A stretch of DNA of 64,000 bases from Octopus sinensis (taxonomy: Eukaryota): contig NC_042998.1 of NCBI RefSeq assembly GCF_006345805.1, forward strand, positions 41,602,001-41,666,000. Direction: 5' to 3'. Shown one piece after another: positions 3,530 through 45,724 of this stretch (the stretch's first letter is position 1; each line of letters starts with the position of its first letter). Under the pieces are notes generated by a model that made no database searches, was not told the origin of the DNA, and worked only from the letters and a program-made list of their open reading frames with translations. The position numbers were made by a program, and so were the translations under genes.

Positions 3530-4024
3530 ATGCCACATGTTAATTGTTGCATCCCTTTCTGTTCTGCCGACTCTAAAAGACATGCAAGAATCCGTTTCTA
3601 TAGTCTCCCTAAGGAAGAAACCCGTCGTGCTACTTGGGTTGCACTCATAAGAAACAGTAACTTACGTATTGATTCTAAGTACACAAGTGTTTGTAGTCTA
3701 CATTTTCCCAATGGCAAAAAAACCCACGACAAAAAAGACCCTTCTTTTTTCCCTTGGTCACAGGAATGGCCTGCAATTATCAACAACTACAACATGATGC
3801 GAACCCAGTTGGGACTGGATAACATGTCGCCAGAACAACAACGTAAGAACCGGCCGATGACGCTAAGAATTCCTCCCATTTGTCCGTGGGCTAATAAATA
3901 TATTAATGTGACATCGCAAAAAAGTTTGAATGAGTTGTTTTCTCCGAAGATTTTGCAATGTGACATCGACTTCGAAGACATAACTAAGGTCTCGAGTAAT
4001 CGGGATTTTCTCAATCAAATCGAA
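3530..4024 (+). CDS. Coding exon 1 of the THAP-domain module (165 codons)
   Basis: C2CH THAP signature C6-x4-C11...C55-x2-H58, with P27, W36, F59 and a C-terminal DPSFF box. Donor GAA|GTGAGT at 4025, phase 0. Confidence 0.9.
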
Positions 4025-4747
4025 GTGAGTTCATCCAATTATTTTCTCATTTAATTTTCATCAGGCTATTATTTATACACTACGGTCACTTGACACACGT
4101 GTATGTATGAGTGTCGTTTATATTCTATTTATTTTCATATATAAAAATCTTTGTTTCGCGTGTCTTGTTTCCCCAAATGAAACAAGAAGTGATTCCTTTA
4201 GTAAACTTCCACATGCATCAGTTTTGGGAAAATCTGCGAATTTATTAATTCATTTATTTTTCCATAATTAAAAACTTACGTATCGTTTTCTTTCTTTCTT
4301 TTTCTTGAATGTTTATTCTTGAGGAAATATTCAACTTGTGGACAGACTGTATACAGTATATTTTAATTAACACTTGCTAAATGTTGACAATTTAACCACC
4401 AGCTTTTTAGTCCTTCGAACTGTTAGTAGCCAACGCAATCATAATTTTATTATTTGTTTTGTTAATATTGCACTCAATATTTTAGAAATATCTCTTTTAT
4501 TAAAATATGACAGTTAATCAATACAAACGCAAAATTTACAACACTGAAATATATACAATATCGCCTCCACCCTTCTCTACCTTTCTCTCTCCTTTTCTTT
4601 GACATTCTTTCAGCTGGTTTTATTTATTGAATGTTAGTATAAAACTAGCAAAAGATTTCATAATAAAATGTTATTTGATTGCATTTTCTTATTTCGGTTT
4701 CATAAACTAAACCAAGTAGATTGTAGTAGATACATTACCATTATCGA

Positions 4748-5106
4748 TATGGCTGTGTCATTAAGTTCGCTTCGCAACCACATAGTTTTGAGTTCAATTC
4801 CACGGTGCGTCACCTTGGACATGTTTCTTCTCCGATAGTCCCGAACCGACTAATTCCTTTTGAGTAAATTTGGTGAACGGAAATTGTGTGGGAGCTTGTC
4901 ATACACACACATATATGTATCTGTCTTCACCGCTTGACAACCGGTGCTGGTTTGTTTATGTCCCGTAAGTTGCCTATTCGGCATAAGCGATTGACCAAAT
5001 AAGTTTCTGACTTTAAAAAAAAAAAGTGAGTATTAGGGTTGATTTTTATCAACTAAAACCCTTCAAAGCAGTGCTCCAGCATGGCTGCAGTCACATGGCA
5101 AACAAG
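4748..5106 (+). mobile_element. SINE family A copy
   Basis: atggctgtgtcattaag...gagttcaattcc head (A/B boxes), caccttggac core, gcagtgctccagcatggc tail. Confidence 0.75.
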
Positions 5107-5111
5107 TAAAC

Positions 5112-5142
<31 letters not shown>

Positions 5143-5529
5143 GGCATAACTACAAGTTTCGCCCCCTCCCCATAATGTAATTATAATAAAAATGGGTCCT
5201 TACAGAAATTAACAACATTGTGGTTCAATTTCCATGAGGGTTAATACAGTTATTGATTAGACAAGAAAGTTATATATCGTCATCAGAAAATATCTAGATT
5301 GTTTTATTTATTTATTTATTTGATAATGAATCACTGAAAGTAGTAATGTATTTCAAGTAATACTCCTCAGCAGAAAGGATGCTGTCTGAAACATTAGATG
5401 TTTCTTCTTCCTAGGTAATTTATTACACTTTTGAACTGAGTAATTGCTAACACAGATCATCCCTATTTTCCTGGGATACAAGCTCTTTATTGTAGTTGAA
5501 ACAATCCTGTTTTAAAATATTGGGCAAGA

Positions 5530-6465
5530 AAATTTGGAACTGTTCAGTTTCACAGATTAAAATTTTTTTTTTTTTAAACTAAAGAGTTTGATACTTTGTA
5601 TGTTGGTGTAATTTCTCACACTGAACACGGTTTACTTTCAACATTTTTGACAATATTTGATATTTTAGAAGTTATTTCGTGTTAAAGTTGTCGTATTTGG
5701 GTAGTTTTAACCAATCAATGATGTATATTCAGCTGTAGAAAGTTACTGCTGTTAGCGATAGTAATTGAAGAGAAACAACTTCTGGATCATCTCTACTAAA
5801 TGTCACCACTGTGTTCTATTTTATGTTTGTTTACTCCCTGTGTTGCATATTACATGCTTTTTGGGGGGTGGGGGTGTCTTGCGTCAGAGTAACCAGTAAA
5901 CATCAAAGAATCAACACCAAGAAGGAAGAAATATTATTTACATATATTTATTCATTTGCCTGAATGTAGTTAGAGATACAGCAGTAATTGTAGTGGTAGT
6001 GACAAGTTCGCTCACTGGTTGGTAGTTGATAGTGTAGAAGTGGCTGTCTGCCAGTAGAGCGGGAAAGAGTAAGGAATGCATGGTGCTGAATAGAAAGGAA
6101 GAAAGCTTCTCTTTTGTGTCAGCTGTGGCCAAGGAGCAACACTTTTCCTTCACCCTTTGCTTGACATATGAATAGAACAGAGTTGACATTTAGTAGAGAT
6201 GACCCGGAAGTTGATCCTCTTCGATTACTATTGCAAACAGCAGTAGCTTTCTTCAACTGAATACATGTTGTTGATTGGTTAAAATTACCCATGTATGATA
6301 ACTTTAACACAAAATAACTTTTAAAATACGAAATTTTGTCAAAAATATTGAAAGTGAACCATGTTCAACATTAGAAATTACACCAGTATACAAAGTTTCA
6401 AACTATTTAGTTAAAATATAATAATTTTTAAGTCTGTGAGCGAAACTGTACAAATCTGAAAATTC
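5530..6465. mobile_element. Fold-back/MITE-like element with ~250-300 bp inverted arms around a ~340 bp spacer
   Basis: 5572-5826 aligns to the reverse complement of 6164-6416 (about 80% by eye), with weaker extension outward. Confidence 0.8.
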
Positions 6466-6741
6466 CAGCATAGTTCAAGAGTGAAATGCCTGCATGGATA
6501 TAATACAAAAGACTGGATGTAATGCAGTTGATTAGTTTGAAAGAATACAATTTATAATGGAGGAATGAGCATACTCAGGTCAGCATCTGAGTGAAAGAAT
6601 TTAGAGATTGTTGGAAAGAGGACTACAAATTCATTCAAAGTTCTTTTTTTTTTTTAATTTTTAATAAATGAAGGGGGACACATGTTAAAGAAAAGGTAGT
6701 GTGGTGAATTTTAACTTTTATAAAATATACAATTTGTTAAG

Positions 6742-6960: not shown

Positions 6961-7022
6961 TGCCAGAGATGATAGTAGCTCACTTCTGCTCGCAATATAT
7001 ATATATCAAGTGAACACCAATT

Positions 7023-7520: not shown

Positions 7521-8715
7521 TTTGCAAATTTTGCTCAGAAAAGAATCCAAAAGTTTCTTGCATTAATTTCAGTAAGATTGAGTTCTTGGATTTCAGTGAG
7601 GTTTTTTTATGTGATTATCTTCATTTTCTAAAATATATGAGGGAATAGCAATTTCTTCTTTAAGGAAAGCTGAATTTACATTTTGATGGTAACTGCTCTT
7701 TGGTTCTTTAATTCCTATTAGAGAATACCATTGTTTTGTTGCTCTAGTCACTCCTAATGAAGCAGAGCTTATAGTATATAGATAATCGATCAAATGACTT
7801 GTTACAATCCACTGTACCAGTCCCCTTGATGTAATATGATTCTGCCTCATAGAGGACCACACAATATACTTGAATATATGGGATGTAGTCCTGAATTTAA
7901 GACTGTTAACTGCAAATAGACTAGCATTTTTCTGGAGGGAATTTTTCTCTCAAATGTTACAATCTGAATCTAAACATCTGCTTTAAAGTAGAAGTAAAAT
8001 GAAATACTATTAAATAACTAGCTTGTTAATGGATCTAGAGTTCACATTTACTACAAGCATATTGTTGTACCAGCAAACTTAGTACTGCATACCTTGGAGC
8101 AATGGGTTCGACAAGAAATAATCAAAAACTAAGTTTGCAGTACCATATAACTTTTTACAGTATTATAGCATTGATAACATTGACTGAACACTTATAACAA
8201 CAGTATTCATAACATTCCTTGATCGAGCAACTTTTCTTCCAACTTTTCAGGAACAAATATTTTAAACAAAATTAAGAGGTTATCAGATTGCTGTTAACAT
8301 TTTAGAAATATATTTCAAATTCAAACAATTGTCTACTGAATCTTGTTGGCACATGAATTGCATGTTAATATTTGTGTTTTCTTAATTGCAATATTGTGTT
8401 TCTTCAAAAAATTCTTTAACTTTTCTATTATTTTTCTGTACCGGTCAATTTACTTCCAGTCACCTCCCTGTCTGTCATCAAGATTGTATGATCTTTATTC
8501 ATCTAATTTGTACACATAAAAACCCGTAACATTTCTTTTTAGCGCCTTTTATCATATGCTCTTAAATATTTTTCTTAAATATTAATCTAAATATTGATTA
8601 TGAGATCTCTAAAAAGAACTGCATTTTTTTTTTCATTTTACCGAGCAGAAGTTGCAGAGTGGCTCAAAGGCCAAGAGTTTTGCCCATTTGCACTTATGAA
8701 ACTTATTGGTTTATC

Positions 8716-9110
8716 ATCATCATCTTTGTTTAACGTCCGTTTTCCTTGCTGGCATGGGTTGGACAGTTTGACTGAGGTCTGGAGAGCCAGCTGCTGCACC
8801 AAGCTTCAATCTGATCTGGCAATGTTTCTACAGCTGGATGCCATTCCTAATGCCAGCCACTCCAAGAGTGTAGTGGGTGCTTTTTACGTGCCACCAGCAC
8901 AGGAGCCAGTCAGGCAGGCCTGGCATCGATCATGTTCAGATAGTGCTTTTTATGTGTCACTGGCACAGGGGCCAGTCAGTAGGTACTGGCATCAGCCACA
9001 TTTGGATGGTGCTTTTTAAGTGCCACTGGCATGGGAGCCAATCAGGGGGCATTGGTCACAGCTGCGAAATTGGTTTTATTTGACTCAACAGGTCTTCTCA
9101 AGCGTATCAT
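8716..9110 (-). mobile_element. RTE LINE 3' tail fragment
   Basis: Same (CAT)n-tailed sequence as 1097-1455 and 47437-47745. Confidence 0.75.
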
Positions 9111-10609
9111 ATTTCAAGATGCATCAGGGATACTCTTAACTGGGCTGGACATGCATAGCTGCAACTCACTTTAGTTGCTGGGTCCTCTCAATCAGAAGAA
9201 TTGCATAAAGTTTTACCCTGCATGTCCCTTATATGGAATAATATATTCATTACATCATTTAGATTTTACTTCTTGTTAAACCTTTTTTTTTTTTGGTGAA
9301 GATTCCATTTTACATATAATGATATTTATGAAATTTAAGGGTAACAACTTGCAGACAGTAGTGAGTAAATAACTACCTTAGCTGGAGTAGTGGTCCATGC
9401 AAAAGCCAGTATAATACATACAAAGGCAATAAATAGTGGGGCTCATTCAGTAATGAGAAAATCTATTCATTATTGTCAGCATCATCATCATTGTTCTACA
9501 TTTACGTTTTATGTTTGAATGGTTTGGATGATTCTTGATCATATGGTATTTTATCTGGAAAGTCTAATATTCTTAGATTGACCCAACTACTTTCCATGTC
9601 TTTTTTGCTCTACATCTACTGCTAATACTTTCTGTCCTCAGTGCATGGCATTTTTTCATTTAAATATGTATCATCCATAGAAATATTAATATTTCTAAGT
9701 CTCTCTAAAGGAGACTACGGCAGCGGTACTGGATATTAATAGTTATCGCCAAGCTAACATGGCAGTCCAGGAAAATATATTACATCTATTTATCAGTAGC
9801 ATCCACTTTTTGCAGATATTATTTAGTGTCTGGTTGATTTTTCAATTTATTTGCACACTTTCCTAAATTAATATTGCAGACTCAGTGGCTTTTTAATCAT
9901 TCCTTGTCAATTATTGCAAAATTATTTTGTTTAGTGCTCTCATTTCACTACCATCCAGCATCACGTGCTCCAGCTAGAGACACGATATGCAATTAGTTTT
10001 ATACAGAATGAGACACTGCACATGAATATTTAGAAGTTGTAGGTTTATATTTTCAGTTTGAGGAGATCTAATAATACCAAAACATGTCCAGAGTTGTCAC
10101 TGTACTATTACGATCCACTCACTCTCCACTTCATTGCGTGCATTCTATTTTTAAATATTCAACATTTTAGGGTTGTTTCCCCTATATTTCTTGTATAGAA
10201 TTGATCATTGAGCTAATGATTCTTTCATCTAACTATGGATGTAATTTTAATTAAAATTTCTGAGCTTGCTGCATTAAGTTATCACCGATATTATCATTGC
10301 TCAAACTGCATCTCACTCCTTGTTCAGCTCCAGAGAACTTTTTCTATTTTTAATATTCTTTGATTTCTATTTTCTGAGTACTATTTCCATCAGTTTCAAA
10401 ACAGTTACTTGTTGAATAAAACATTGAGAATTAGCTGAATTAATCTGCGATAAATTAGACAAAAATCAATAATTAAAAGAATTTACCTCTTTAGTAATTT
10501 GGATATTTTATTTACAATGTTTTGGGTAGTGTTGCATTAAATTATAATTAAGTTGGACACGTACAGGATATACTATTAATTCTTTTCTATATCTTTATTC
10601 ACATTTTGC

Positions 10610-11987: not shown

Positions 11988-14108
11988 TCATCATCATCAT
12001 TGTTGTCGTTTAACGCCTGCTTTCTATGCTGATATGGGGTGGACGGTTTGACTGAGGACTGGCGAGCCAGAAGGCTGCACCAGGCTCCAATCTGATCTGG
12101 CAAAGTTTCTGCAGCTGGATGCTCTTCCTAATGCCTACCACACTGAAAGTGTAGTGGGTGCTTTTACGTGCTACCAGGGCCAGTCAGGTGGTACTGGCAA
12201 TGATCATGCTCAAAAGGTGTTTTACATGTGCTATTTGCACGGGAGCCAGTCCGGCAGCACTGGCAACAACCATGCTCAAATATTATTTTTCATGTGCCAG
12301 GAAGGCAATGATCATGCTTGGATGGTGCTTTTAACGTTCCACTGGCACGAGTTGCCAATCAGGTGGTACTGTTATCGGTCACGTCAGCGATTTTGATTTC
12401 ACTTGCCTCAACAGATCTTCGCAAGCAAAGTTTATTGTTCAGTGAATGAAGGGTACTCATAAGTGGGCTGGTTATACACCACTGGTATAGGCCACGGGTT
12501 ATGGTCTCACTTGGCTTGCTGGATCTTCTCAAGCACAGCATATCTCCAAAGGTCTCAGTCACTAGTCATTGCCTCGGTGAGGCCCAATGTTCAAAAGTCA
12601 TGCTTCACCACCTCATCCCAAGTCTTCCTGTGTCTACCTCTTCCACAGGTTCCCTCAACTGCTAGGGTATGGCACTTTTTCACACAGTTGTCCTCATCCA
12701 TTCACAACACGTGACCATACCAGCGCAGTCATTTCTCTTGTACATCACATCTGATGCTTCTTAAGTCCAACTTTTCTCTCAGGGCACTTACACTCTGTTG
12801 TGTATGCACACTGACATTACACATCCAGCGAGTATACTGGCTTCATTCCTTGCAAGCTTACGTATGTCCTCAGCAGTCACGGCCCATGTTTCACTGCCAT
12901 GTAGCATGGCTGTTTGTACACATGCGTCATACAGCCTACCTTTTACTCTGAGCAAGAGACCTTTTGTCACCAGCAGAGGTAGGAGCTCTCTGAACTTTGC
13001 CCAGGCTATTCTTATTCTAGCAGCTACACTTTCAAAGCATCTACCCCTGCTACTGACTCAGTCACCTAGGTAACAGAAGCTATCAACTACTTGTAGTTTT
13101 TCTCTCTGGAATGTAACAGAAGCTGTTCTTTGCACATTTTCAGTGTTTATTGCTCCTGAGCATTTGCCACATACAATAACTATCTTCACAGTTAGCCTTC
13201 CTTTAATATTGCTGCACCTCTTATGTGTCCATAGCTTACACTGGGTACATCTTATGGAGTTTCTACCTACGCCTTTTCTACAGACTGAGCAGGGTCATCT
13301 ACCTGAAGGGATTTGTGGTTTGTCTGCCTTCCTACTTATTAAGACTTTGGTTTTAGCTAGGTTGATTGTAAGGCCCTTTGATTCTAATCCTCACTTCCAC
13401 ACCTGAAACTTCTCCTCTAGTTCTGATAGTGATTCAGCAATTAGAGCAAGGTCATCAGCATAGAGGAGCTCCCAGGGGCATCCTGTCTTGAATTCCTCTG
13501 TTATTGCCTGGAGGACTATGATGAATAAGAGAGGGCTGAGGACTGATCCTTGGTGGACCCTACCCCTACCTGAAATTCTTCACTGTACTCATTGCCAACC
13601 TTCACCTTACTGACAGCATCCCTGTACATGGCTTGCACAGCTCTCAATAACCATTCATCTATCCCTAGTTTCCTCATTGACCACTGGATAAGCGATCAGG
13701 GGACCTTGTCAAAGGCTTTCTTCATGTCAACGAAAGCCAGGTACAGAGGTTTATCTTTGGCTAGGTATTTCTCTTACAGCTGTCTTACCAAAATATAGCA
13801 TTAGTGGTGCTTTCTCCTGGCACAAACCCCAACTGCATCTCATCTAGGCTGACACTCTCTTTCTAATTAGTTGGGTTATGACCCTCTCTAATTATTCGTA
13901 TATAATGCATCACCTTTACCTTTGTAACAGTTGACTATGGTGCTGCTACACCAGTCATTGGGTATGACTCCGTCACATATCACCTGGTTGACTATATGGG
14001 TGACTAAGCTATAGCTGACACTGCCAGATATTTTGAGCATCTCAGCGGTGATTCCTGATGGGCCGGGGGCTTTCCCTGTCTTCATACCCTTAATTGCTTT
14101 AACTACCA
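11988..14108 (-). mobile_element. 5'-truncated RTE (BovB-like) LINE with decayed reverse transcriptase
   Basis: Minus-strand peptides MKTGKAPGPSGITAEMLK, YLAFVDMKKAFDKVP, GVHQGSVLSPLLF, ELLYADDLAL and AMLHGSETW; frameshifts and stops; (CAT)n tail at 11988. Confidence 0.9.
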
Positions 14109-15822: not shown

Positions 15823-16080
15823 GCAGGAGTGGTTATGTGGTAAGTAGCTTGCTTACCAACCACATGGTCATAGGTTCAGTCCGACAGCGTGGAATCTTGG
15901 GCAAGTGTCTTCTACTATAGCCTTGCTGGTGTGTTTATGTCCCCGTAACTTAGCGGTTCAGCAAAAGAGACAGATAGAATAAGTACTAGGCTTACAAAGA
16001 ATAATTCCGTGGTCGATTTGCTCGACTAGAGGCGGTGCTCCAGCATGGCCGCAGTCAAACGACTGAAACCAGTAAAATAA
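15823..16080 (+). mobile_element. SINE family A copy with internal deletion
   Basis: gcaggagtggttatgtggtaagtagcttgc head joined directly to the gctggtgtgtttatgtcccc tail. Confidence 0.8.
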
Positions 16081-17454
16081 TAAAAGAAAGAAATACAAAC
16101 CAAGGGTAAAAATGGATATAAATGCAAAAAGAAATGGATATAAAACTGTGTTTATGAAAGTAGGGTATAATTTGAGTGAGATTTGTCTGTAAATCATATT
16201 AAAGTCAATTAAAAAATGTGATAAATATACATGTATATATTATTGTTTTACTGCTTCTAGGTATTCAAATTATTCATATGTAAGAAAACAAAAAACATTT
16301 ATGTGATTAAATATCTGGAGCAAAATGTTGATGTGTTTAACGCATTTGATAGAGATTTCTCTTAAGTCATTCTGTTGTTAGTTTGGTAGCTAAGCAGAAG
16401 AAGTTGTGGATACTGTCTTTCCTACCTGATTAAACAGTAAAAAAAAAAATCTATAACAAAGAAGTCAATTTTCAAGGAAACTGAGAATGGGCTCCTTGAA
16501 TATACAAGATAGAAAAATAAAATGTGTGATGGTGTCTGCAAAAAGTTCTGAAAACCCATGAAAGATAGCATGAGAGGCCATAAAACTTTAGTGCTTGTTA
16601 AAGTTATTCTGATAAACTTCTGGAACAACCTACTAAGGGCAAAAGACCAAATTTATGATTAGTACAAAGTCCTGGCCAGACTGAGGTGATGTAGTGGAGA
16701 ATTAGTCGAGATGAGATGCAGTTTGGTTTTGTGCCAGGGAGAAGCACTATAGATGCCATTTTTCTTGTAAGACAGCTACAGAAGTATTGTACTTGGCATT
16801 TGTTGGCCTGGTGAACTGATGGCCTCTGAAGAAGCTAGGAGTAAATGAAAGGCTGTGAGAAACATACAAGCCGTGTATAGGAATGCTGTTAGTAACATGT
16901 AGAACAACAAATTTAGTGTACAGTTTGGAGTTTTCATAAGCACATAGAAGATGCAGTGGAATTGCAGGAAGGTTAATTGGAAAGTAAACTTTGTATGTGG
17001 CAGTAAACATTAAGAACACACAATAGATTCTTTCAAATGCCCAGGAAGTTTCCTAGAAGTAGTACATAATTTCCGTTACTTAAAGGGTCCTGATTAGCAG
17101 TGGGGGAAGAAATTCTGAAAGTATGGTTACTAGAATAAGAAGAGGATAGAGAAAATTCAAGGAGTTATTACCTCTTTAGGTAACAAAAGGTCTCTCCCTC
17201 AGAGTGAAAGGCATATTGCACAATGCTTGTGTACAATTAACAATGTCACATGATAGTGAGATGTGTGATCTGAAACCAGAGGATATGTGAAGATGAGAAA
17301 AGAATGAACATAGTATATTCTGATGGGTGTGCAGGTACAACAAAGTATAAATGTGTTGAGGTCGAGATTTTGGATATAAGAAGAAACATGTTGTGAGAGA
17401 AGACTGCACTCATTGGTATGGATGATGACAATTGTATAAAGAAATGCTGATTAC

Positions 17455-18990: not shown

Positions 18991-19034
18991 CCATATATGT
19001 GTATGTGTGCATATATTTATGCATATTTGTCTTA

Positions 19035-19989: not shown

Positions 19990-21129
19990 TTAGGTCGTCA
20001 AGTATGAAATTTGTAGTAAGGTATATAGTAAACTTTGACAGCTGCTCATTTTGCACCATTATTATATTTTGAATCTTTATTTTTTGTTAGAAAGCTGACA
20101 CGTCTATTTCTTTATTCTAACTCATTCATACAGTTTTGAAATATGAGTTCTTTCTTGGAAATGCATCACAAACAGCTCAGAATATTACTGGAGTATTTCA
20201 GACAGTATCAAATTGGTTTGCAAAATTTCGTTCTGGTAACTTTGACCTCACAAATGAGCAACACGGTCAACCAGAAACAAAGGTGGATAGTGACAAACTG
20301 AAAGCCACCATCGAGTCAGATCCATCTGAAAGTGCCTGTGAATTATCGTTGTTGTTTGGTGTTAGCAAGCAAATAATATTGACTCACCTAGTTCAAGTTG
20401 GTAAAGAGAAAAAGTTGGATAAGTGGGTTCTACATGAACACAATGAAAATCAGAAACAGCAATGCTACTTTCTTGTCACAAAAATGAATCATTTTTTTTA
20501 ATCGAATTGTAACGTGATGAGAAATGGATCCAGTACAACAACTGTAAACATTCAGCGCAATGGTTGGACAAAGACGAGCCACCAAAACACAGTCCAAAAA
20601 GCTAAATTCATCAAAAGAAGCTGATAGTGTGTGTTTGGTGGTCTGGTGCAGGTATGATCCATTATGATTTCTTAAACCTGGCTCATCAATCATGGCCGAA
20701 GTATACTGCAGCCAACTGGACCAATTGATGCAGAAACTTACCAAAGAACAGCCTAGATTAGTCAATAGATCCACTCCTATTTTATTGCAAGACAAAAATG
20801 ACATTGGTAAAACTACAGGAGCAGGAGTTGGAATTTCTCCATCATCCACCATACTCACATGATCTTGCCCCCACTGACTACCACTTCTTCCAGAATGTGG
20901 ATAACTTTTTGATAGGAAAAAAATTAATTTCAATGGTACTATAAAACAGGCCTTCCAAGATTTTATTGACTCTAGATTCCCAGGCTTTTACAGTTCTGGG
21001 CTGGACAAGCTACCACTGAAATGGCAAAAGTGTATTGACAATATATTTTGATGAGTAAAACTATTCCTTGTATTTATAAAAGATAAGAAAACTTTTTTTT
21101 TTCTACAAATTTCATACTTGACGACCTAA
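19990..21129 (+). mobile_element. Mariner (Tc1/mariner) transposon, full length by TIRs, transposase pseudogenised
   Basis: Perfect 27 bp TIRs TTAGGTCGTCAAGTATGAAATTTGTAG / CTACAAATTTCATACTTGACGACCTAA; TA on the left, CA on the right; peptides WFAKFRSGNFDL, KKLDKWVLHE, EKWIQYNN, KLIVCVWW; frameshifts. Confidence 0.92.
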
Positions 21130-22578: not shown

Positions 22579-22979
22579 GTTGATTGTCAGGTAATCAAAC
22601 AAGAACCACTCTCTGAAAGAAATCTTCCATTATTTGGGACTAAAACTGATATATCATCGAATTTAATTGATAAATTACCCTCAGATGTTATTGACAACTC
22701 TGGCCAGCTAATCATTCCTGCAGATTTGCAATCTCACATTAACTCTGAGAATTTAACCACTCACTTTAATCTACCTGATATTACAAACTATTTTAGTCAA
22801 ACTTCTTCATTAAATGATTGCATCCTAGCACAACCCACTGTTTACAACCAATCTACCATGCCTAATAATGCTCAGATTCCAAGAATACAGTCTAGGCTTT
22901 CACACATGACTGTAGATGCCCAACAAAATATGGAACTTCAAAACCAAATACAAAGACAGAACAAAAGATCCTTATATGG
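22579..22979 (+). CDS. Coding exon 2 of the THAP module (VDCQVIKQEP...NKRSLY, 133 codons + 2 nt)
   Basis: Branch-like gctaac, pyrimidine tract and CAG acceptor at 22578. Only phase 0 is open, matching the THAP exon 1 donor. Ends GG|GTAAGT at 22980 (phase 2). Confidence 0.8.
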
Positions 22980-30089: not shown

Positions 30090-30713
30090 CTGTAGTTTAC
30101 CGAAGAGATAGATTGAGAGAGAAAGAGAGAGAGAGAGAGGGTGACTGCAGATATTGCCAGAATTAATATATTGGCATATGCACAACGTGTATGTGTGTGT
30201 TTATATATAGAGAGAGATACACACATATACAACATGCGCACATACACTATCAGATTTGTTATCCTCCATTAAGTTGTTTTGTTTTAAGAGGAACAACAGT
30301 TACAAGTCGAGCGAACTGCTTTCTATTGCTGTATTATTGCTTGTTTTGCAGGACCGATAGCCAGCTAGCAAGCTAACTGACAGCAGCGGGTCTGGTTTAT
30401 AATCAGCTATTATTAGATTGGCTGGTCGACTTCTACCACGTACTACTACCCAGTCTTAAACAATTTATGTAACTTCTGTCGAAAATCTATCTATCCAAAT
30501 TATCCTCAACTGTAACAGATCTATGTAGATTATATTTTGAAAACGAATCAGCGTTTGTGTATCTTTGTAATTCTTTCGCTGGAAAAAAATATATAAAAAA
30601 AAAAGATACCTCTGAACCTGTACTATGGGAAATTTTCTGCACTATGAGAAAAAATCTATTTTATTGAATATGTATTAACTGTCGTTAAGCCAACCTGACA
30701 AAGCCTCAACAAG
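30090..30713 (+). promoter_or_regulatory. Probable alternative promoter and 5' leader of the Crypton-derived module (GA tract, CpG-containing, possible small intron 30189-30351)
   Basis: GTATGT donor-like at 30189, ttgttttgcag acceptor at 30351, and caagATGGcg start context. No transcript evidence. Confidence 0.4.
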
Positions 30714-32254
30714 ATGGCGACTGAGTGGCATAAGGTGGTCCAACCTAGTAGTAATCTGACTGTTGTCGATAATTCAAGTAAACAAACTACTGAAGATAAA
30801 CACTGTCAGAAAACGAAAGATAGTACGCAATGGGGGGTGCGAGTTTTCACCGATTTTTGCAATGAAGTTGGTTATAATGTGGAGTCTGCGACCCAAGATG
30901 TGTCATTATTATGTCAGGTATTGAAGCGATTATATGCTGGAGCGCGAACAAAAAAATGTGAACTTTATCAGCTCACAGCTTTCCGTTCTCTTCGTTATGC
31001 ACTCAAACGACACTTTGAGGAAACTCTCAATCTGGATATTATTAAAGGAGATGCTTTCGTCGAAGCGAACGAATCCTTTGTTTTTATGGAGAAGCGTATT
31101 AAAGCCGAGGGCAAAGGCCTGATACGACATTACCCTCCTGTCGAAGAGCAAGACATGGCTCGTTTAAAAGAATATTTTAAAGCAAACATGCAGAATCCAA
31201 CTCCACGGGAACTTTTGGAGTATGTTTGGTTTATTTTGCAATATTACATGTGCAGACTGGGAAGAGATGGACAGACAGAATTGAAGATAACTTCATTTGT
31301 TATTCGGACTGATGCTCAGGGAGAGCGGAGCATTGTTCAAAACGAATCTGAACCTCTGGATGGAAACGGGGAAAATGATGAGGAATTAGCTGGAGGGCTG
31401 ATACCATCGTTGAAAGGAGATGTGCTCTGTCCAGTGAGGGCATACGAGTTGTATATTTCTAAACTGCATCAGGATTTTGATAGACTTTTCCAAAAACCTA
31501 AAAAACTGGTTGATTCTAGTCAACCGTATTGGTTCGATCGCATTCCGTATGGTAAAACTCCTCTGGGTGGTATGATGCCTACGCTAAGCCACAAGGCAGG
31601 ACTGTCCAAACGTTACACTAACCACAGTCTGAGAGCTACGGCCATAGAGAAACTACTGTGGGGTGGCATAAACAGAAAAGATGTTCGTGCTATCAGTCAG
31701 TTATTCGGACAGCCAACATCTGTTTCACAGAGAAAGAAGATGGCATCTATTCTTAGTAACATTGCTGGAGAGCAAAGTACATCAGCAGTAGCAACACCCT
31801 TCTTGGAAGAGGCTCGATTAAATTCTAAGATCACCTCCAACAAAAGGGTAAATAATTTCAGAAATGAATTTCAACATCTCTCAAATAATTCTACTGCCTT
31901 ATCGCAGAAAAAGAATATTAATCTCCTCACTTCATCACCAATATCATCCCTAAATACTTCGTGTTTACCAAAATCTAACGCTACAAGGCCGCATCTTTCA
32001 ACAACCGGAGATTCCAGCGAAAAATCTGTCAATTGGAGAGAACAAGTTACAAACAGAAGACAACAGATAAGTTCCAGTGAGGCAAAAAACAACTTACGGT
32101 GTTTACAAAGTTTACATTTTGGAAGAGGGAGAGAATCGAAAGAAAAAAGTTCTAGCAGAATTGAAACTCAGGAAGAGAATCGTGTTGCCGACCAAAGTTC
32201 AGAGACATCCTCCTTTATGATTACAGATGTGCATTCTTGCGCCAACTCTTTCAC
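30714..32254 (+). CDS. Crypton-derived DUF3504 / tyrosine-recombinase-fold coding exon (513 codons + 2 nt; 514 aa if unspliced, stop at 32258)
   Basis: Crypton-type motifs KTKDSTQWGVRVF, LRYALKRH, YVWF..QYYMCRLGRD, CPVRAYELYISKL, W....P.GK..LG.MM and KRYTNHSLRAT. The ORF is intact and ends at AC|GTAAGC, a phase-2 donor. Confidence 0.88.
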
Positions 32255-40960: not shown

Positions 40961-42310
40961 GTAGGCTCGACAACAAATGGTAGTGAACAATTTTAAAGCT
41001 GATCTAAGTTATTGAGACAGGTTTGACAGTATGTTTATTAGATTATTCAATGATTTTCTTCTGTAATTTACTAATATAACATTTGTTATCATATTTTTTT
41101 TTCTTCACTTGCAAGATCTTTCATGTCCATGTACTTCTCATTTTGAAAATTGGAACAGTTGAATAAGGTTACTTAAGTAATCAGTTACTGTTACATAGCA
41201 TTTGCAGAAATATGCAACCATGTTTTACTTCTGTTGGCATAACATTTAAAAGTGAAATCAAAACATTTTATTTCATACATCATGAGCGGTATGGTCACTG
41301 CGAATCTATACATATTTCTATCTATAAAAGTGAATGCAGTGTTTCTGTCTGGAGTCCTAAGCTCTTACTTTACCTATTTCCCCCTATTTTTGCTTGCTAT
41401 TGGAGCAAGCTTTTTGATTTATGGTAGCATTATGTTGTAAAATATTGTTGACAGAATTTTATATTAAATGCTATTAAATGTAAATTTCACTATTCATATA
41501 TATTATGTGCTTATATATGTGCATGCACATATACACACAACAGTTATGCATGTGTGTGTGTGTGTGTGTGTGTGTGTTTGTGTGTATATATAAATAAAAG
41601 AAAACATAGAAGTGATAGTTTCTTTATATAAAAGTCTTTGAATTTTCTTAAAGAAATGAAATATTACTTAAATTCTTTTAGAATGTTTGTTTTGTCTAGC
41701 AATGTAGAGTCAGTTTCTGTTTTCATAACACACACATATGAGAGAGGGAGAGATTTCTGTGAATACATTTCATTAATGTTCTGTAACTTTAACATTTGTT
41801 TTTTAACATGGTATTGCTTTACACATTATATTATATGTTTATTTATTTCTCTGTGACATACACACCAGAAAAAGGTATAAAAGATGTTGTTCTGCTCTGG
41901 GATGATAAAATTTGGTAGAATGTAGCAGAATAATGTATGATATAATTGTCTTTAGTGTGATGATTTTCAAATAAGTGACGTAGCACTCATCTCATCTGAA
42001 TTGTTTCTAAAGCTGGATTGATGAATAATGTTGCAATTGAGTTTTACTTCATGTTATAAGCCTCTTCATTTTTATTTTGAGCATTTTGTGGTGGCAGTTA
42101 TTGTAAAAATGAGACCTGACTACAAAATAAGCTAGGTGAGGGTATCAGTGGAGGTATCAGTTACTACCCTTCAGCTATGTTTGGTGCAAATATTTGTGAC
42201 TACTAAAATGTTGACAATTGAATTGCAATATTTTAATTTATTTTTAATGTTTTTGTCAATTTATATCCAACATCCATCATGTATTATATTTCATTTCTCT
42301 TTATGTACAG

Positions 42311-42473
42311 TGAGCAGAATACACCAACAACGTTTATGAAAACAGTTGAAAACCCTACTCATTCATATGTTGTGCACAAACATCAAGGCCACATGCTCTC
42401 CAATATGACCAATCTTTGGAAAAAAGGTAAACTCTGTGATGCTTCCATTGGAAATGGAACAATGAAAATTATG
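42311..42473 (+). CDS. Shared BTB exon A (EQNTPTTFMKTVENP...LCDASIGNGTMKIM); internal ATG at 42336
   Basis: Pyrimidine tract and CAG acceptor at 42310. Only a phase-2 entry is open; phases 0 and 1 hit TGA. Donor ATG|GTAAGT at 42474. Encodes the N-terminal BTB motif H...L.NL...G.LCD. Confidence 0.88.
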
Positions 42474-42989
42474 GTAAGTATTAAATATCAAATCATGATT
42501 ATCTAACTCTGTATCTATTCATGTACACTTGTTTTTCTTTATTATTTAAGTATTTTCCTTTAGTATGTTAATATCAGCTGCTAATCCAAATCATGAGCAC
42601 AGACATTATAGCACATAAGTATTTTAAAGCCAATTTTCCCTGCTAAAATAGGGGTTAACTTAATGGTTCCACTGACAGTCTACATTATTAATATGAGATA
42701 ACAAATATGGGACAAATGACAGATCTCTTCAAGGTGAAGGCCCTGCTTGACATGTAGAAATGCTGTTGGGAGAAACTCCAAATGGTGTACTCAGTGCAAG
42801 TTTTGGACACATAAGAGCTGCAGTAACATCGCTGGAAAATTAACAGAGACAGTAGTCTTTACACGTGGCTAATGTGCAAGTACATTAAACACTAGGAATG
42901 TTAAAAAAAATAGACTCCCTCAAATGTCGGGGTGATCCTTAGAAGTAGTTAACAGTTTCTGTTACTTAGGTGAGGTTGTTCTGAAAACA

Positions 42990-43770
42990 TAGCTGCTAGA
43001 ATAAGAATGCACTGGGTAAAGTTCAGAGATCTGCTACTCTGTTAGTAATGAAGGGTCTCTCTCTCAGAGTAAAAGGCAGATTGTATGATGCCTGTGCATG
43101 AACATTTATGCTACATAGCAGTGAGACATGAGCTGTGACTATTGAGGACATGTGAAGGCATGAAAAAAATGAAGCCAGATGGGTAATGTCAGTGTGCATA
43201 TACGACTGAGTATAAGTGATTTGAGAGAAAAACTGGGTATACAAGGCATCACGTGTAGTGTACAAGAGAGAAGACTGCAATGGTACGTTCATGTAATGCT
43301 TATAAATGCAGGTAGATGCATCAAGAAATGCTGATCTCTTATTGTGAAGGGGTAGACCCAAGAAGACATGGGATGAAGTGGTAAAAAAGGATCTTCAAAC
43401 GTTGTATCTTACAGAGGAGACAACAGGGAACTGAAACTTCTAGTGATTTGCTTTGCTTGAGAAGACACATGAAGCTAAGTAAAATTGTGTTTGTCCTTGC
43501 ATACAGGCATGACCTCTGGATCCCTTTTCAGCTGAGTGATCCTAATCTTGCTGGCTCATGGGTGCTGGTGCCACATAAAAAGCACCTATGCCAGTACCAT
43601 GTAAAAGCACCCAGTACACTCTGTGAAATGGTTGGCATTAGAAAGGGCATCCAGCTGTAGAAACCATACAACAACAGACATGGAGCTCGGGCAACTCTTC
43701 AGCTGGCTAGCACCTGTTAAACCATCCAACCCATGCCAGCAAGGAAAACAGATGTTAAAAGATAATGATA
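42990..43770 (+). mobile_element. RTE LINE 3' fragment including 3' UTR
   Basis: ggtctctctctcagagtaaaaggcagattgtatgatgcc (GLSLRVKGRLYDA), gggtagacccaagaagacatggg, tail ccaacccatgccagca. Confidence 0.8.
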
Positions 43771-44743
43771 TATCATATTGGTACTTTGTAACATTGGAGT
43801 CCACAATGTGAAGTGGGTAAAAGAAAAATTAAATGTAATGAAAACAATCAAAATTGGAAAATTGAAATTGATAATAATGTATTTTAAATCACTTGCATTT
43901 GCCAAACAAGCCAATGAATTGTTTTCAGTGTAATCAACAACAGATTTGTTTGAAATTATGAATATTGTTTATGATACCTGAAATCTCATGGGCTCTTTGA
44001 CTGGTTAAGAAAAAAAGTAAAAGAAAGATAACTAAAACTAAACCATGCAAACAAAGAGACAACTATGTATGTGTATATATCATCATTGTTTCAATGTCTA
44101 CTTTTCCGTGCTTTCATGGGTCAGACAGAGTTTATTGAGGTAGATTTTCTATGGCCAGATGTCCTTCCTGCTGCCAACCCTTACTTGTTTCTAAGCTTGG
44201 TAATATTTCAATATAGCCAGACGTGTTTCCACAGAATATTGAAAATAAAGGACATTCATTTACAGCAATCACGCAATGTCATGACATGAAGACACAAGTT
44301 TACAGACATATACGTGTGTATGTATGCATGTATGCACATACATTAATACATAATTTTTATTATTTTTTTTGTGAGGCAGATTCTCAACATACCTTGTGTT
44401 AGAAGTATATAGAGTCCTGTGTTTCTAGCCTATGTAAGTTAAGAGCAAATATATGAAGAAATGTAATATTGTGATTATTCATGATCATGTACTATTTATT
44501 GGAATACAAAGGATTATTCATCTCCTCTTTTCTTCCTAAATTATAAAATAGTTTCCTAATTTCCTAAGTCAATAATGTGTTAATGTTTCCAATCAAAGAA
44601 ATGTGTTATGTCTCTGTACACAAAATATATTTTTAAATAATATATTTTTGCAGGGTTTGGGGTTCAGTTAGGCTTTTAATGTGATTCTTTGAAATATTCT
44701 GCTTTTATTGTTTTTCTATAAATATGTGTTCTTTCTTTTCTAG

Positions 44744-45724
44744 GTTCACAAAGTTGTGTTGATTGCTCTTAGTCCACAACTTTTAACATTGCCAAATGCC
44801 ACTGTAACATCAGGTTGTTTCCAGTTGACATTTTCTCAGGATATTGGTGGTGATGCTTTATGGGCATTTGCTAAATATATGTATGAAGGTGTTGTCTCCC
44901 TTAATGAGGAGGTATTGGAGGATATGGAGCATATTGCAAAAATCCTTGGTTTAAGTGATCTATTAGATATGTGTAAACTTTATCGGAAACAGGTTTTGAG
45001 TTCTATTGACAATCCTGTCACAACTAAGGCCTTAATCTCTCAACCAACTGAATCTCCAGGCATTATTAGGGATGCCATTTCAACAGAGATTGTTAATACA
45101 ATGGATACAATGCCTAAAACTGATGGCCCATCTTTATCAACTGGTGTATCTTTCATGGGTTTACCCAATAGTGATATTACTCCATCAATCTCGAAACCAG
45201 TGCAACAGTTACAGAACTTAGCTACAGAATCAATGACAAATCAAATACAGTTCCAAACAAAACAATCAGTTCCTCCGGTGATCCTTTATTCAGCTGATAA
45301 AGACTCTTCAGTTTCAGGCTATGCCAATGATTCTGTAGGATTAAAACAAGAACCATCAAGTCCTTTGAAAAAAAGGTGCAGTAAAAAAGATTTCTTATCT
45401 TCTTTCCCTTCAAGACACTCAGACACACATATTGTTGTCCACGATGATTTATCAGAACCTTGGCAACCACATTCTTACTGTGATAATGAAGACCCAAAAA
45501 GTCCTCCACCTCCAAAGCGTCTAAAATCTTCAGAACTACCTGAAGATTCTTTATCTAATTTATCTCACTCAAATACTGAAGATTTCAGTCCTCACACTAA
45601 AAGTGCCAAAGACTCTTATCCTATCAAAATTGAACTTGAACGAGACAGTAACAGTGATTTAGAAACTTCTGGGATTCCTTATGTTGTGTCGTTAATTCAA
45701 GCCAAAGGCCTGGACACTACTTGA
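44744..45724 (+). CDS. Shared BTB exon B, terminal coding exon (VHKVVLIALSP...GLDTT*, 326 aa)
   Basis: ttctttcttttctag acceptor, phase 0. BTB core VHKVVL..SP...YMYEG...IAKILGL..L..MC, followed by a Ser/Pro-rich tail. No zinc fingers. Confidence 0.9.
   Translation, partial: VHKVVLIALSPQLLTLPNATVTSGCFQLTFSQDIGGDALWAFAKYMYEGVVSLNEEVLEDMEHIAKILGLSDLLDMCKLYRKQVLSSIDNPVTTKALISQPTESPGIIRDAISTEIVNTMDTMPKTDGPSLSTGVSFMGLPNSDITPSISKPVQQLQNLATESMTNQIQFQTKQSVPPVILYSADKDSSVSGYANDSVGLKQEPSSPLKKRCSKKDFLSSFPSRHSDTHIVVHDDLSEPWQPHSYCDNEDPKSPPPPKRLKSSELPEDSLSNLSHSNTEDFSPHTKSAKDSYPIKIELERDSNSDLETSGIPYVVSLIQAKGLDTT

What the first reader, a model, noticed from the sequence alone, without database searches (positions are those of the whole stretch)
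3530..45724. Variable-head / constant-body locus: alternative THAP or Crypton DNA-binding modules spliced in frame to one shared BTB region
Seen in the sequence: the THAP module's last exon ends TAT GG|GTAAGT (22979/22980), and the Crypton ORF ends TTC AC|GTAAGC (32254/32255). In both, the apparent TAA stop lies inside a consensus donor and the junction is phase 2. The acceptor at 42310 (CAG|T GAG CAG AAT ACA CCA ACA ACG TTT ATG) is open only for a phase-2 entry; the other two frames hit TGA. Both joins therefore give continuous ORFs: ...SLYG-EQNTPTTFMK... (THAP-BTB, 679 aa) and ...NSFT-EQNTPTTFMK... (DUF3504-BTB, 894 aa). Known background: Drosophila mod(mdg4) and lola use a constant N-terminal BTB with variable C-terminal DNA-binding exons, and clustered protocadherins use variable 5' exons on constant 3' exons. 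Inference: this locus has the inverse of the mod(mdg4)/lola layout, with alternative promoters choosing a transposon-related DNA-binding head for a common dimerising BTB body. An ORF-based annotation would call three separate genes.
Basis: partly seen in the sequence, partly recalled or inferred. Interest (0 to 1): 0.92.

Follow-up and report, generated by a model that had tools for sequence, protein, structure and literature searches.

The report
Two transposon-derived heads, one BTB body
An octopus gene can put either a THAP zinc finger or a tamed, inactive Crypton transposon recombinase in front of the same BTB protein body; the layout is real and conserved across cephalopods, but it is already in public gene annotation and resembles vertebrate KCTD1.

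Summary
Both predicted fusion proteins already exist in public annotation with identical sequence. They are Octopus sinensis LOC115230799 isoform X1 (DUF3504-BTB, 894 aa) and isoform X2 (THAP-BTB, 679 aa, also in the O. vulgaris annotation).

The Crypton/DUF3504-to-BTB splice is directly seen in seven cuttlefish RNA contigs. Their 5' ends lie in the DUF3504 exon's own leader, with no THAP exon. The DUF3504 exon sits at the same place in octopus and in three decapod sequences. It ends in the same TTCAC|GTAAGCA, is under purifying selection (dN/dS about 0.15) and has lost catalytic residues.

The THAP-to-BTB splice rests on gene models from three pipelines, not on an RNA contig I could retrieve. 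THAP-only isoforms using the same donor also exist.

Cephalopods carry at least three further DUF3504-BTB proteins from paralogous genes. The closest precedent is vertebrate KCTD1 isoform b, a Crypton exon used as an alternative first coding exon of a BTB gene (Kojima and Jurka 2011). The BTB here is POZ type, so the case looks independent.

Interest is moderate.

The parts
3530..4024 (+). THAP head, coding exon 1. It runs from ATG 3530 to the donor GAA|GTGAGT (phase 0). The THAP zinc finger covers aa 6-68, with the C2CH pattern C6/7..C11..C55-x2-H58.
   Evidence: Pfam THAP E 1.7e-11. The exon end was read. It is 55% aa identical to Sepia L001 9680-10171.
22579..22979 (+). THAP head, coding exon 2. 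It is a low-complexity linker. The acceptor is ttccag|GTT and the donor is GG|GTAAGT (phase 2).
   Evidence: The same exon and the same GG|GTAAGT donor occur in Sepia L001 15972-16420. The donor is used in RNA contig L003.
30352..30375 (+). Alternative acceptor (ttttgcag|G at 30351/30352) inside the DUF3504 exon leader. When THAP exon 2 splices here, the frame ends after TDSQLAS-stop, giving a 306-aa THAP-only product.
   Evidence: XP_014776314.1 of O. bimaculoides ends ...SLYGTDSQLAS. There is an exact DNA match at 30352-30376.
30397..30431 (+). Conserved 35-nt element in the 5' leader of the DUF3504 exon. Its function is unknown.
   Evidence: 91% identical to Sepia L001 47892-47926. It lies inside five of the seven Sepia RNA contigs.
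30622..30680 (+). About 60-nt leader element that is almost invariant between octopus and decapods. It contains a conserved 7-codon upstream ORF at 30644-30667 (MRKN[L/P]FY-stop).
   Evidence: Alignment A2. No Rfam match and no stable fold.
30714..32254 (+). DUF3504 head. This is a complete domesticated Crypton tyrosine-recombinase ORF in one exon (513 codons plus 2 nt). The donor is AC|GTAAGC in phase 2, and the apparent TAA stop lies inside the donor.
   Evidence: Pfam DUF3504. The AlphaFold model has a Cre-like two-domain fold. A syntenic orthologue lies in Sepia at 59% aa identity by tblastn (65% over the 501 codons aligned) and in a third decapod sequence (L011). The splice is used in seven RNA contigs. 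dN/dS is 0.15-0.17.
42311..42473 (+). Shared body exon A, carrying the N-terminal half of the BTB/POZ domain. The acceptor is cag|T (phase 2 entry) and the donor is ATG|GTAAGT (phase 0).
   Evidence: The phase-2 acceptor is conserved in Sepia (cttcag|G) and in L011 (tccag|G).
44744..45724 (+). Shared body exon B. It holds the C-terminal half of the BTB/POZ domain and a roughly 250-aa tail with conserved motifs (LSEPWQPxSYC, PPPKRLK, terminal PYxVSL). The stop is TAA at 45722-45724.

Best explanation
The region 3530-45724 is one gene, RefSeq LOC115230799 of Octopus sinensis. It has a shared two-exon body: a BTB/POZ domain plus a conserved tail with a basic PPPKRLK stretch that looks like a nuclear localisation signal. 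It has two alternative N-terminal heads.

Head 1 is a two-exon THAP zinc-finger module, transcribed from the upstream promoter.

Head 2 is a single 1.9-kb exon that lies in the intron between THAP exon 2 and the body. It carries a whole Crypton transposon tyrosine-recombinase ORF that has been domesticated. It is catalytically dead in octopus: the box-I Arg is Leu and the Tyr is deleted. It is syntenic and under purifying selection across coleoid cephalopods. It has its own conserved 5' leader and, by inference, its own promoter.

The natural end of the Crypton ORF has become a splice donor whose GTAAG overlaps the old stop. Both heads leave in phase 2 and enter the same acceptor. The products are THAP-BTB (679 aa) and DUF3504-BTB (894 aa).

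Inferred mechanism: the BTB body dimerises and recruits partners, and the head decides where or with whom it acts. The THAP head would act through sequence-specific DNA binding. The DUF3504 head would act through a Cre-like DNA clamp or, as in QRICH1/Zincore, by gripping another DNA-bound factor. Because the body is common, homo- and heterodimers of the two isoforms are possible.

Short THAP-only products arise when THAP exon 2 splices to other acceptors.

Shown: the exon structure, the conservation, DUF3504-BTB mRNA in cuttlefish, and the loss of catalytic residues. Inferred: the separate promoter in octopus, the abundance of THAP-BTB, and all biochemical functions.
For: Match to annotation. 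The predicted proteins are identical to XP_029656788.1 (X1) and XP_036368416.1 (X2, = O. vulgaris CAI9718551.1).

RNA evidence for DUF3504-BTB. Seven Logan RNA contigs from seven runs map to the Sepia pharaonis genome as DUF3504 exon | exon A | exon B. All carry the junction ...GATACATTCAC|GGATCGAAATG. Their 5' ends are colinear with the genome 250-540 nt upstream of the ATG, and none holds a THAP exon.

Gene models for THAP-BTB. Sepia gene models P0002 (THAP exon 1 tail + exon 2 + A + B) and P0024 (DUF3504 tail + A + B) both exist. The O. vulgaris model is THAP+BTB.

Splice-site conservation. The donor TTCAC|GTAAGCA is identical in octopus, two Sepia and a third decapod sequence. The phase-2 acceptor is conserved. 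Sepia and the third decapod have no ATG in exon A ahead of the BTB, so the body needs an upstream coding exon.

DNA conservation. Octopus-Sepia DNA similarity is confined to the exons, and at the DUF3504 and exon A donors it ends 7 nt beyond the splice site.

Selection. dN/dS is 0.15-0.17 for DUF3504, 0.125 for the THAP head and 0.19 for the body.

Head structure. The fold is Cre-like (E 2.7e-7), and the second-best match is QRICH1 in Zincore, PDB 9hjt. Catalytic boxes were read.

Body type. The BTB is POZ type; the best PDB matches are ZBTB17/BCL6 and KLHL3.
Against: No RNA contig with the THAP exon 2 to exon A junction was retrieved. The only spliced THAP RNA contig (L003, a decapod) uses the same donor but goes to a different small exon and stops.

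O. bimaculoides RefSeq keeps THAP as a separate gene, with products of 306 aa and later 299 aa.

The older O. bimaculoides model splices THAP exon 2 into the DUF3504 exon leader. So some DUF3504-exon transcripts may start at the THAP promoter rather than at a promoter of their own.

Octopus exon A contains an ATG (42335) that could in principle start a BTB-only product.

No functional data exist for any isoform.
Confidence: 0.75

Rival explanations
1. Only DUF3504-BTB is a genuine fusion gene. THAP is an independent upstream gene whose normal products are short THAP-only proteins. The THAP-BTB models would then be rare read-through splices or annotation chimeras that happen to be in frame.
For: RNA contig L003 joins THAP exons 1 and 2 to a private terminal exon. 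O. bimaculoides RefSeq annotates THAP alone.
Against: Three annotation pipelines give THAP-BTB: RefSeq O. sinensis X2, O. vulgaris, and S. pharaonis P0002. P0002 starts at an internal Met of the THAP exon, which suggests a 5'-truncated transcript assembly rather than an ab initio call; this is my inference. The phase-2 donor and frame compatibility are kept in both octopus and Sepia. Absence from the protein searches is weak evidence, because one search also missed proteins known to contain the body.
Confidence: 0.2
2. There are three unrelated genes: a THAP gene ending at TAA 22981-22983, a nested intronic Crypton-derived gene ending at TAA 32256-32258, and a BTB gene starting at ATG 42335. 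The GTAAG donors would then be coincidences.
For: Each ORF reads to a stop in the genome, which is why ORF-level reading gives three units. Octopus exon A has an in-frame ATG.
Against: Seven spliced RNA contigs carry the DUF3504-BTB join. Sepia and the third decapod lack any ATG in exon A ahead of the BTB. The Sepia contigs that read through the donor are genomic, not mRNA. The stop-in-GTAAG context is rare, at 4 of 190 open frames.
Confidence: 0.02
3. The DUF3504 ORF is simply a Crypton transposon copy, active or decaying, that sits in an intron.
For: It is similar to Crypton-type tyrosine recombinases at 27-36% identity. The ORF spans the whole length of such proteins, including their C-terminal F..C..F motif.
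Against: It holds the same position between the same exons in octopus and decapods. dN/dS is about 0.15. The box-I Arg is lost in all orthologues and the Tyr is deleted in octopus. There is a single copy in the window. It is spliced to host exons.
Confidence: 0.01

Closest known systems
Vertebrate KCTD1 isoforms a and b (Kojima and Jurka 2011, Mob DNA 2:12, PMC3212892)
   Same: A Crypton-derived DUF3504 domain is confined to a single upstream exon. It serves as an alternative N-terminal coding exon and is spliced onto the shared BTB-encoding exons of a host gene. A second isoform lacks the DUF3504 domain. The domain has lost catalytic residues and is highly conserved.
   Different: The BTB here is POZ type (PF00651; nearest solved structures ZBTB17/BCL6 and KLHL3), not the KCTD/T1 type, so it is not a KCTD1 orthologue. 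The other isoform is not BTB-only but carries a second transposon-related head (THAP). The Crypton exon lies inside an intron of the THAP-BTB unit rather than upstream of the whole gene. The distribution seen here is coleoid cephalopods.
Drosophila lola and mod(mdg4)
   Same: One BTB-encoding constant part is combined with alternative DNA-binding modules from the same locus. This gives a set of dimerising factors with different targets (background knowledge).
   Different: The polarity is inverted: here the variable part is N-terminal and chosen by promoter or first exon, and the BTB is C-terminal to it. Only two heads were found, against tens of variable 3' exons. There is no sign of trans-splicing. 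The heads are THAP and a recombinase relic, not C2H2 or FLYWCH.
Other domesticated Crypton (DUF3504) genes: QRICH1, ZMYM2/3/4, WOC, KIAA1958
   Same: The head is a recombinase-derived two-domain fold with a broken catalytic tetrad. QRICH1 in the Zincore complex on DNA (PDB 9hjt) is the second-best structural match. Zincore is described by Bianchi et al. 2025, Science 389:eadv2861, as cited in PMC13538652. These genes are nuclear regulators.
   Different: There is no MYM zinc finger, CARD or glutamine-rich region. The partner domain is BTB/POZ. This is a separate, lineage-restricted domestication; the nearest non-cephalopod relatives are 27-36% identical and lack BTB.
Cephalopod paralogues: O. 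sinensis LOC115220336 (XP_029646297.1), O. bimaculoides LOC106879774, and Sepia P0037/CAE1321133.1. P0038 is a similar protein from a Logan run whose species was not identified.
   Same: The architecture is the same: DUF3504 head, BTB/POZ, then a tail ending in PYPVSLV. The BTB is 37% identical (P0037). In the one paralogous locus examined (Sepia L021, encoding P0037) the intron inside the BTB is at the same place (..IM|VHK..).
   Different: The heads are only 27-31% identical to this one and did not group with it in a neighbour-joining bootstrap (0 of 200). The Sepia paralogue has extra linker exons. Whether the paralogues have a THAP alternative is unknown.
Variable-first-exon loci (clustered protocadherins, UGT1A)
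   Same: Promoter choice selects a 5' coding exon that is spliced to constant 3' exons (background knowledge).
   Different: Here there are two unrelated heads rather than an array of paralogous exons, and one head is itself made of two exons.

Membership tests
Domesticated Crypton / DUF3504 genes | Sequence and fold similarity to Crypton tyrosine recombinase (DUF3504, PF12012) | tested here: met
   PF12012 scores E 2.6e-7 at 31.3 bits against a cut-off of 29.7 for the ORF alone. It scores 29.5 bits within the 894-aa fusion, just below the cut-off. In the AlphaFold model, residues 30-350 (pLDDT about 90) match Cre recombinase at E 2.7e-7 over about 337 columns, and also QRICH1.
Domesticated Crypton / DUF3504 genes | Incomplete catalytic tetrad R-H-R-Y | tested here: met
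   The box-I Arg (R-G-x-E) is Leu in all four cephalopod orthologues. His and Arg of YTNHSLRAT are kept. The Tyr is kept in decapods but removed by an 8-aa deletion in Octopus. Which Arg is the catalytic one is assigned by alignment and background knowledge.
Domesticated Crypton / DUF3504 genes | Orthologous single-copy position in distant species, with purifying selection | tested here: met
   The exon lies in the same intron of the same gene in Octopus, two Sepia and a third decapod sequence. dN/dS is 0.15-0.17.
Domesticated Crypton / DUF3504 genes | Expressed as part of a host mRNA | tested here: met
   Seven spliced RNA contigs in cuttlefish. For octopus, only RefSeq models are available.
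KCTD1 (isoform b) orthologue | DUF3504 in one exon spliced to shared BTB exons, plus a DUF3504-less isoform | tested here: met
   The description of KCTD1 comes from PMC3212892.
KCTD1 (isoform b) orthologue | BTB of the KCTD/T1 tetramerisation type, orthologous to KCTD1/KCTD15 | tested here: not met
   Pfam reports PF00651 (BTB/POZ) and no other BTB family for either isoform. All 23 PDB sequence matches are ZBTB-, KLHL- or KBTBD-type BTB proteins (plus gigaxonin, IVNS1ABP and PATZ1), and none is a KCTD.
lola / mod(mdg4)-type BTB loci | Constant N-terminal BTB exons joined to many alternative C-terminal DNA-binding exons | tested here: not met
   The BTB lies C-terminal to the variable part. 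Only two heads exist. No other conserved exon was found between octopus and Sepia in the locus, and no other ORF in the window has a domain hit apart from mariner debris.
lola / mod(mdg4)-type BTB loci | Trans-splicing of variable exons | not testable with these tools
   This needs strand- and allele-resolved RNA data.
THAP domain proteins | N-terminal C2CH zinc-finger signature (C-x2-4-C-x35-53-C-x2-H) | tested here: met
   PF05485 scores E 1.7e-11. Read directly from the translation: C6/C7-x-C11, then 43 residues, then C55-x2-H58.
Active Crypton transposon | Intact recombinase, multiple mobile copies, no fixed orthologous position | tested here: not met

The most novel reading that the evidence does not exclude
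Coleoid cephalopods may own a lineage-specific family of recombinase-relic-plus-BTB/POZ regulators. These could have arisen by repeated capture of different Crypton ORFs as first exons of paralogous BTB genes. In support, the heads of this locus and of three other DUF3504-BTB proteins never group together in the tree, while their bodies clearly do. This would be convergent with vertebrate KCTD1b. At this locus the THAP-BTB and DUF3504-BTB isoforms might heterodimerise through the common BTB, coupling two transposon-derived modes of target recognition. The near-invariant 60-nt leader with its upstream ORF might then set the ratio of the two.
Probability: 0.15. Interest if true: 0.7.

Novelty: new member of a known kind. 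Interest (0 to 1): 0.45.

Why it matters
It adds an independent invertebrate example of a whole Crypton recombinase ORF turned into an alternative first coding exon of a BTB gene. That is the same solution vertebrates reached in KCTD1b, and it suggests the recombinase-relic plus BTB combination is functionally favoured.

It shows in sequence how such an exon can be born: the transposon's own stop codon sits inside the new splice donor.

It gives cephalopod biology a small, conserved and so far uncharacterised family of candidate nuclear regulators built from transposon parts. It also gives a clean locus for testing how one BTB scaffold is redirected by swapping heads.

Practically, it flags that the O. 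bimaculoides and Sepia annotations split or truncate this gene.

Tried and rejected
Search for further heads. No other + strand ORF in the window has a relevant domain; the only hit is a mariner HTH fragment. Octopus-Sepia DNA similarity marks no extra exon.

Stand-alone DUF3504 mRNA. The Sepia contigs whose ORF stops at FT-stop (P0004, L013-L020) turned out to be genomic. The one examined (L013) is colinear with the genome through the intron and far upstream of the leader, and the others have near-identical lengths and gene positions and come from a separate set of runs.

RNA element in the conserved leader. There was no Rfam hit at E up to 1 and no fold better than shuffles (z = 0.4).

Tandem repeats. 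None at score 200 or above.

Orthology to KCTD1. Rejected on BTB type.

Common origin of the paralogues' heads. Neighbour-joining with 200 bootstraps gave no grouping. The tree is star-like, so this is inconclusive rather than evidence of independent capture.

Genomic look-up of the octopus paralogue. P0060 and P0197 were not on record. Only the Sepia paralogue locus L021 was obtained, and its DUF3504 exon lies beyond the 10-kb flank.

Caveat on searches. The first protein search with the body alone returned only 2 hits and missed proteins later shown to contain it. Absence from these searches is therefore weak evidence.

Full report
**What the sequence shows.**

- TATGG|GTAAGT at 22979/22980.
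- TTCAC|GTAAGC at 32254/32255.
- tgtacag|TGAGCAGAAT at 42310/42311.

The exon that starts at 42311 ends at 42473 (ATG|GTAAGT). The next exon starts at 44744 (ttctag|GTTCAC) and runs to a TAA at 45722-45724. Only the frame entered in phase 2 is open through 42311-42473.

The THAP head has two exons: 3530-4024 (donor GAA|GTGAGT, phase 0) and 22579-22979 (acceptor ttccag|GTT). Joining the exons gives 679 aa (THAP-BTB) and 894 aa (DUF3504-BTB).

Pfam finds THAP (E 1.7e-11), DUF3504 (E 2.6e-7, 31.3 bits, just above the cut-off) and, once the two body exons are joined, BTB/POZ (E about 2e-9).

A stop codon buried in GTAAG is uncommon here. It occurs in 4 of 190 open frames of at least 60 codons, and two of those four are the two heads.

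**The predicted proteins already exist in public annotation.**

An exact-sequence look-up shows that the 679-aa protein is XP_036368416.1, 'uncharacterized protein LOC115230799 isoform X2' of Octopus sinensis. It is also CAI9718551.1 of O. vulgaris. The 894-aa protein is XP_029656788.1, isoform X1 of the same gene.

The window is about 98% identical in DNA to the O. vulgaris locus OX597815.1, where a single THAP+BTB gene is called. The window is therefore most likely O. sinensis.

O. bimaculoides has the 894-aa protein with 15 differences, as LOC106873459. It annotates THAP as a separate gene, LOC106873460.

From my background knowledge of NCBI's pipeline, alternative isoforms are normally issued only when alignments support their introns. 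I could not inspect that evidence.

**Comparative evidence.**

The Sepia (Acanthosepion) pharaonis locus L001 has the same parts in the same order and on the same strand:
- THAP exon 1 (9680-10168).
- THAP exon 2 (15972-16420, donor GG|GTAAGT).
- A DUF3504 ORF (about 48233-49833).
- Exon A (from 51676, acceptor cttcag|G).
- Exon B (from 52965).

The DUF3504 ORF is 59% identical in protein to the octopus ORF over its whole length by tblastn (65% over the 501 codons aligned), up to the last residues (FMITDVHSCA..FT). It ends in the same TTCAC|GTAAGCA.

A second Sepia (genomic contigs L013-L020) and a third decapod sequence (L011) show the same donor. L011 also shows the same phase-2 acceptor.

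In Sepia pharaonis and the third decapod, exon A has no ATG ahead of the BTB. The body therefore cannot be a free-standing gene that starts there.

DNA similarity between octopus and Sepia across the locus is confined to five places: THAP exon 1, the DUF3504 exon with its leader, the last 41 nt of that exon plus 7 nt of the donor, exon A plus 7 nt of its donor, and exon B with its polypyrimidine tract.

dN/dS is 0.15-0.17 for the DUF3504 ORF among decapods, 0.125 for the THAP head and 0.19 for the body.

**Transcript evidence.**

A cluster member of the Sepia DUF3504 protein is a 903-aa product carried by seven Logan contigs of 3.0-3.8 kb from seven sequencing runs.

Each contig maps to the Sepia genome in three blocks: DUF3504 exon, exon A and exon B. 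Each has the precise junction ...GATACATTCAC|GGATCGAAATG and the exon A/B junction. These are spliced mRNAs.

Their 5' ends lie at L001 47695-47984, colinear with the genome and 250-540 nt upstream of the ATG. None contains THAP sequence. This is what a separate start site for this head predicts, although assembled contigs do not define a cap site.

For the THAP head I retrieved one spliced RNA contig (L003, a different decapod). It joins exons 1 and 2 and uses the conserved GG| donor. It then continues into a small exon that maps to L001 32282 and stops (..WDYWSDLEYNFSNY-stop).

The older O. bimaculoides model XP_014776314.1 ends ..SLYG-TDSQLAS. That corresponds to splicing from 22979 to a good acceptor at 30351/30352 inside the leader of the DUF3504 exon.

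So the THAP donor is certainly functional and THAP-only products exist. The THAP-to-exon A junction is supported only by gene models from three pipelines: RefSeq X2, the O. vulgaris annotation and Sepia P0002.

P0002 starts at an internal Met of the THAP exon. P0024, its DUF3504 counterpart, starts at an internal Met of the DUF3504 exon. This looks like ORF calling on 5'-truncated transcript assemblies. That is an inference.

**What the Crypton-derived head is.**

The ORF aligns end to end with Crypton-type tyrosine recombinases at 27-36% identity. The alignment includes a C-terminal F..C..F motif that lies at the natural C-terminus of those proteins. So the whole transposon ORF was taken over, and the splice donor sits where its stop codon is.

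An AlphaFold model is confident for residues 30-350 and disordered for 351-514. Its best structural matches are Cre recombinase (E 2.7e-7, both domains) and QRICH1 in the Zincore complex on DNA.

In the catalytic boxes, the Arg of the R-G-x-E box is Leu in all four cephalopod orthologues. YTNHSLRAT keeps its His and Arg. The G-H before the tyrosine is S-Q. The tyrosine is kept in decapods (RRSDSGLENY) but removed by an 8-residue deletion in Octopus. Whatever function is conserved therefore does not need recombination.

Kojima and Jurka proposed DNA binding or protein-protein contact for such domains. The Zincore structure shows a DUF3504 protein gripping a zinc-finger factor on DNA (reference).

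'DNA-binding head' is thus a reasonable reading for DUF3504 but unproven. For THAP it is the family's established function (background knowledge).

**The body.**

The BTB is of the POZ type. The nearest solved relatives are ZBTB17/BCL6, KLHL3 and gigaxonin, and no KCTD appears among the matches.

The tail is poorly conserved except for LSEPWQPxSYC, a basic PPPKRLK stretch and the C-terminal PYxVSL. Dimerisation and partner recruitment are inferred from the family.

**A wider family.**

An exhaustive profile-free search found 3367 relatives of the head. It found only three other proteins with DUF3504 plus BTB/POZ:
- O. sinensis LOC115220336 isoform X2, also present in O. vulgaris and O. bimaculoides.
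- A Sepia protein seen in more than 100 RNA contigs.
- A third protein (P0038) from Logan, species not identified.

Their BTB domains and tails are clearly paralogous to this one. P0037 is 37% identical over 189 aa, and P0060 and P0038 align through to the terminal PYPVSLV motif. In the one paralogous locus examined (Sepia L021) the intron inside the BTB is at the same place.

Their heads are no closer to this head than free Crypton-like proteins are, and never grouped with it in 200 neighbour-joining bootstraps. That tree is star-like and decides nothing.

It is therefore open whether THAP-BTB or DUF3504-BTB was the older state of this locus. It is also open whether the family arose by one fusion followed by duplication or by repeated capture.

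An Argonauta hians model keeps the DUF3504-tail|BTB join.

**Comparison with what is known.**

The closest precedent is vertebrate KCTD1. Its isoform b carries a Crypton-derived DUF3504 domain, confined to one exon, in front of the BTB that isoform a has alone. The authors explained it by a Crypton insertion upstream of the gene that created a new transcriptional variant (PMC3212892).

The cephalopod locus works the same way but is not a KCTD1 orthologue, because the BTB type differs. It differs further in that the other isoform carries a second transposon-related head.

The comparison with lola and mod(mdg4) holds only as an inverted analogy. A survey of transposon-derived factors has already noted that Octopus THAP genes often carry BTB/POZ (PMC10027918).

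I found no paper on Crypton or DUF3504 domestication in cephalopods in the searchable library.

**Verdict.**

The DUF3504-BTB arm is close to certain. The THAP-BTB arm is probable, at about 0.7.

The gene structure is already in RefSeq, and the design has a published vertebrate counterpart. I therefore rate it a new member of a known kind with moderate interest.

The evolutionary reading appears undescribed. It comprises a coleoid family of recombinase-relic BTB proteins, a transposon stop codon turned into a donor, and convergence with KCTD1b.

Noticed in passing
window 30622-30680 (L001 48131-48190; L011 about 9900-9960): A stretch of about 60 nt, 35-90 nt upstream of the DUF3504 ATG, is almost invariant between octopus and three decapod sequences. 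This is far better conserved than the coding sequence (74% nt). It contains a conserved 7-codon upstream ORF (ATG AGA AAA AAT CYA TTT TAT TGA, window 30644-30667). It has no Rfam match and no stable fold, so it looks like a sequence-level translational or transcriptional control element.
   Followed up: partly
window 30397-30431 (L001 47892-47926): A second conserved leader element, 91% identical over 35 nt (ATAATCAGCTATTATTAG..GGCTGG..CGAC). It lies about 285-320 nt upstream of the DUF3504 ATG and inside most of the Sepia RNA contigs. Its function is unknown.
   Followed up: no
window 30351/30352: A strong acceptor (ttgcttgttttgcag|G) sits in the DUF3504 exon leader. It is used by the older O. 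bimaculoides THAP model XP_014776314.1. Transcripts from the THAP promoter that use it would carry a 306-aa THAP-only ORF followed by the whole DUF3504-BTB ORF on one mRNA.
   Followed up: partly
L001 32282-32328 and L003 1073-1122: Decapods have a small alternative exon between THAP exon 2 and the DUF3504 exon. It ends the THAP reading frame, with the tail WNYWPDLEYNFSSY-stop in S. pharaonis. No counterpart was detected in the octopus window by DNA similarity.
   Followed up: partly
L001 53582/53583 and about 59943-59955: Both Sepia pharaonis gene models (P0002, P0024) leave exon B at an internal CCA|GTAAGT and end in a distant 3-codon exon (DGI-stop). This drops the conserved C-terminal tail. 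The seven RNA contigs read straight through, and octopus lacks that donor. It may be a minor isoform or a model artefact.
   Followed up: no
proteins P0060, P0037, P0038; locus L021: Cephalopods have at least three further DUF3504-BTB/POZ proteins that are paralogous to this one, for example O. sinensis LOC115220336, which has several isoforms. P0038 comes from a Logan run of unidentified species. The Sepia protein P0037/P0184 is seen in more than 100 RNA contigs. Whether these genes also have alternative heads is unknown.
   Followed up: partly
protein P0035 (Argonauta hians GAB1597306.1): The argonaut model of this gene keeps the DUF3504-tail|BTB join but lacks the recombinase-like core. Instead it starts with an unrelated cysteine-rich segment that looks transposase-like. 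This is either a chimeric prediction or a real loss or replacement of the head.
   Followed up: no
window 20136-20501 (+) and 56625-56945 (+): Mariner/Mos1-type transposase fragments. The first has a weak HTH_48 hit (E 9e-4); the second is judged by eye only. The first lies in intron 1 of the gene.
   Followed up: partly
window 1144-1479, 8594-9019 and 12000-14000: Repeated ORF-like stretches share the motif GAFYVPPA, and a 2-kb block has higher GC (0.46 against about 0.34). These are probably interspersed repeats. They have no Pfam hit.
   Followed up: no
L011 16280-17063: In the third decapod contig, the body exon B matches in two different frames (16280-16561 and 16479-17063). This means either a frameshift or an assembly error in that record.
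   Followed up: no
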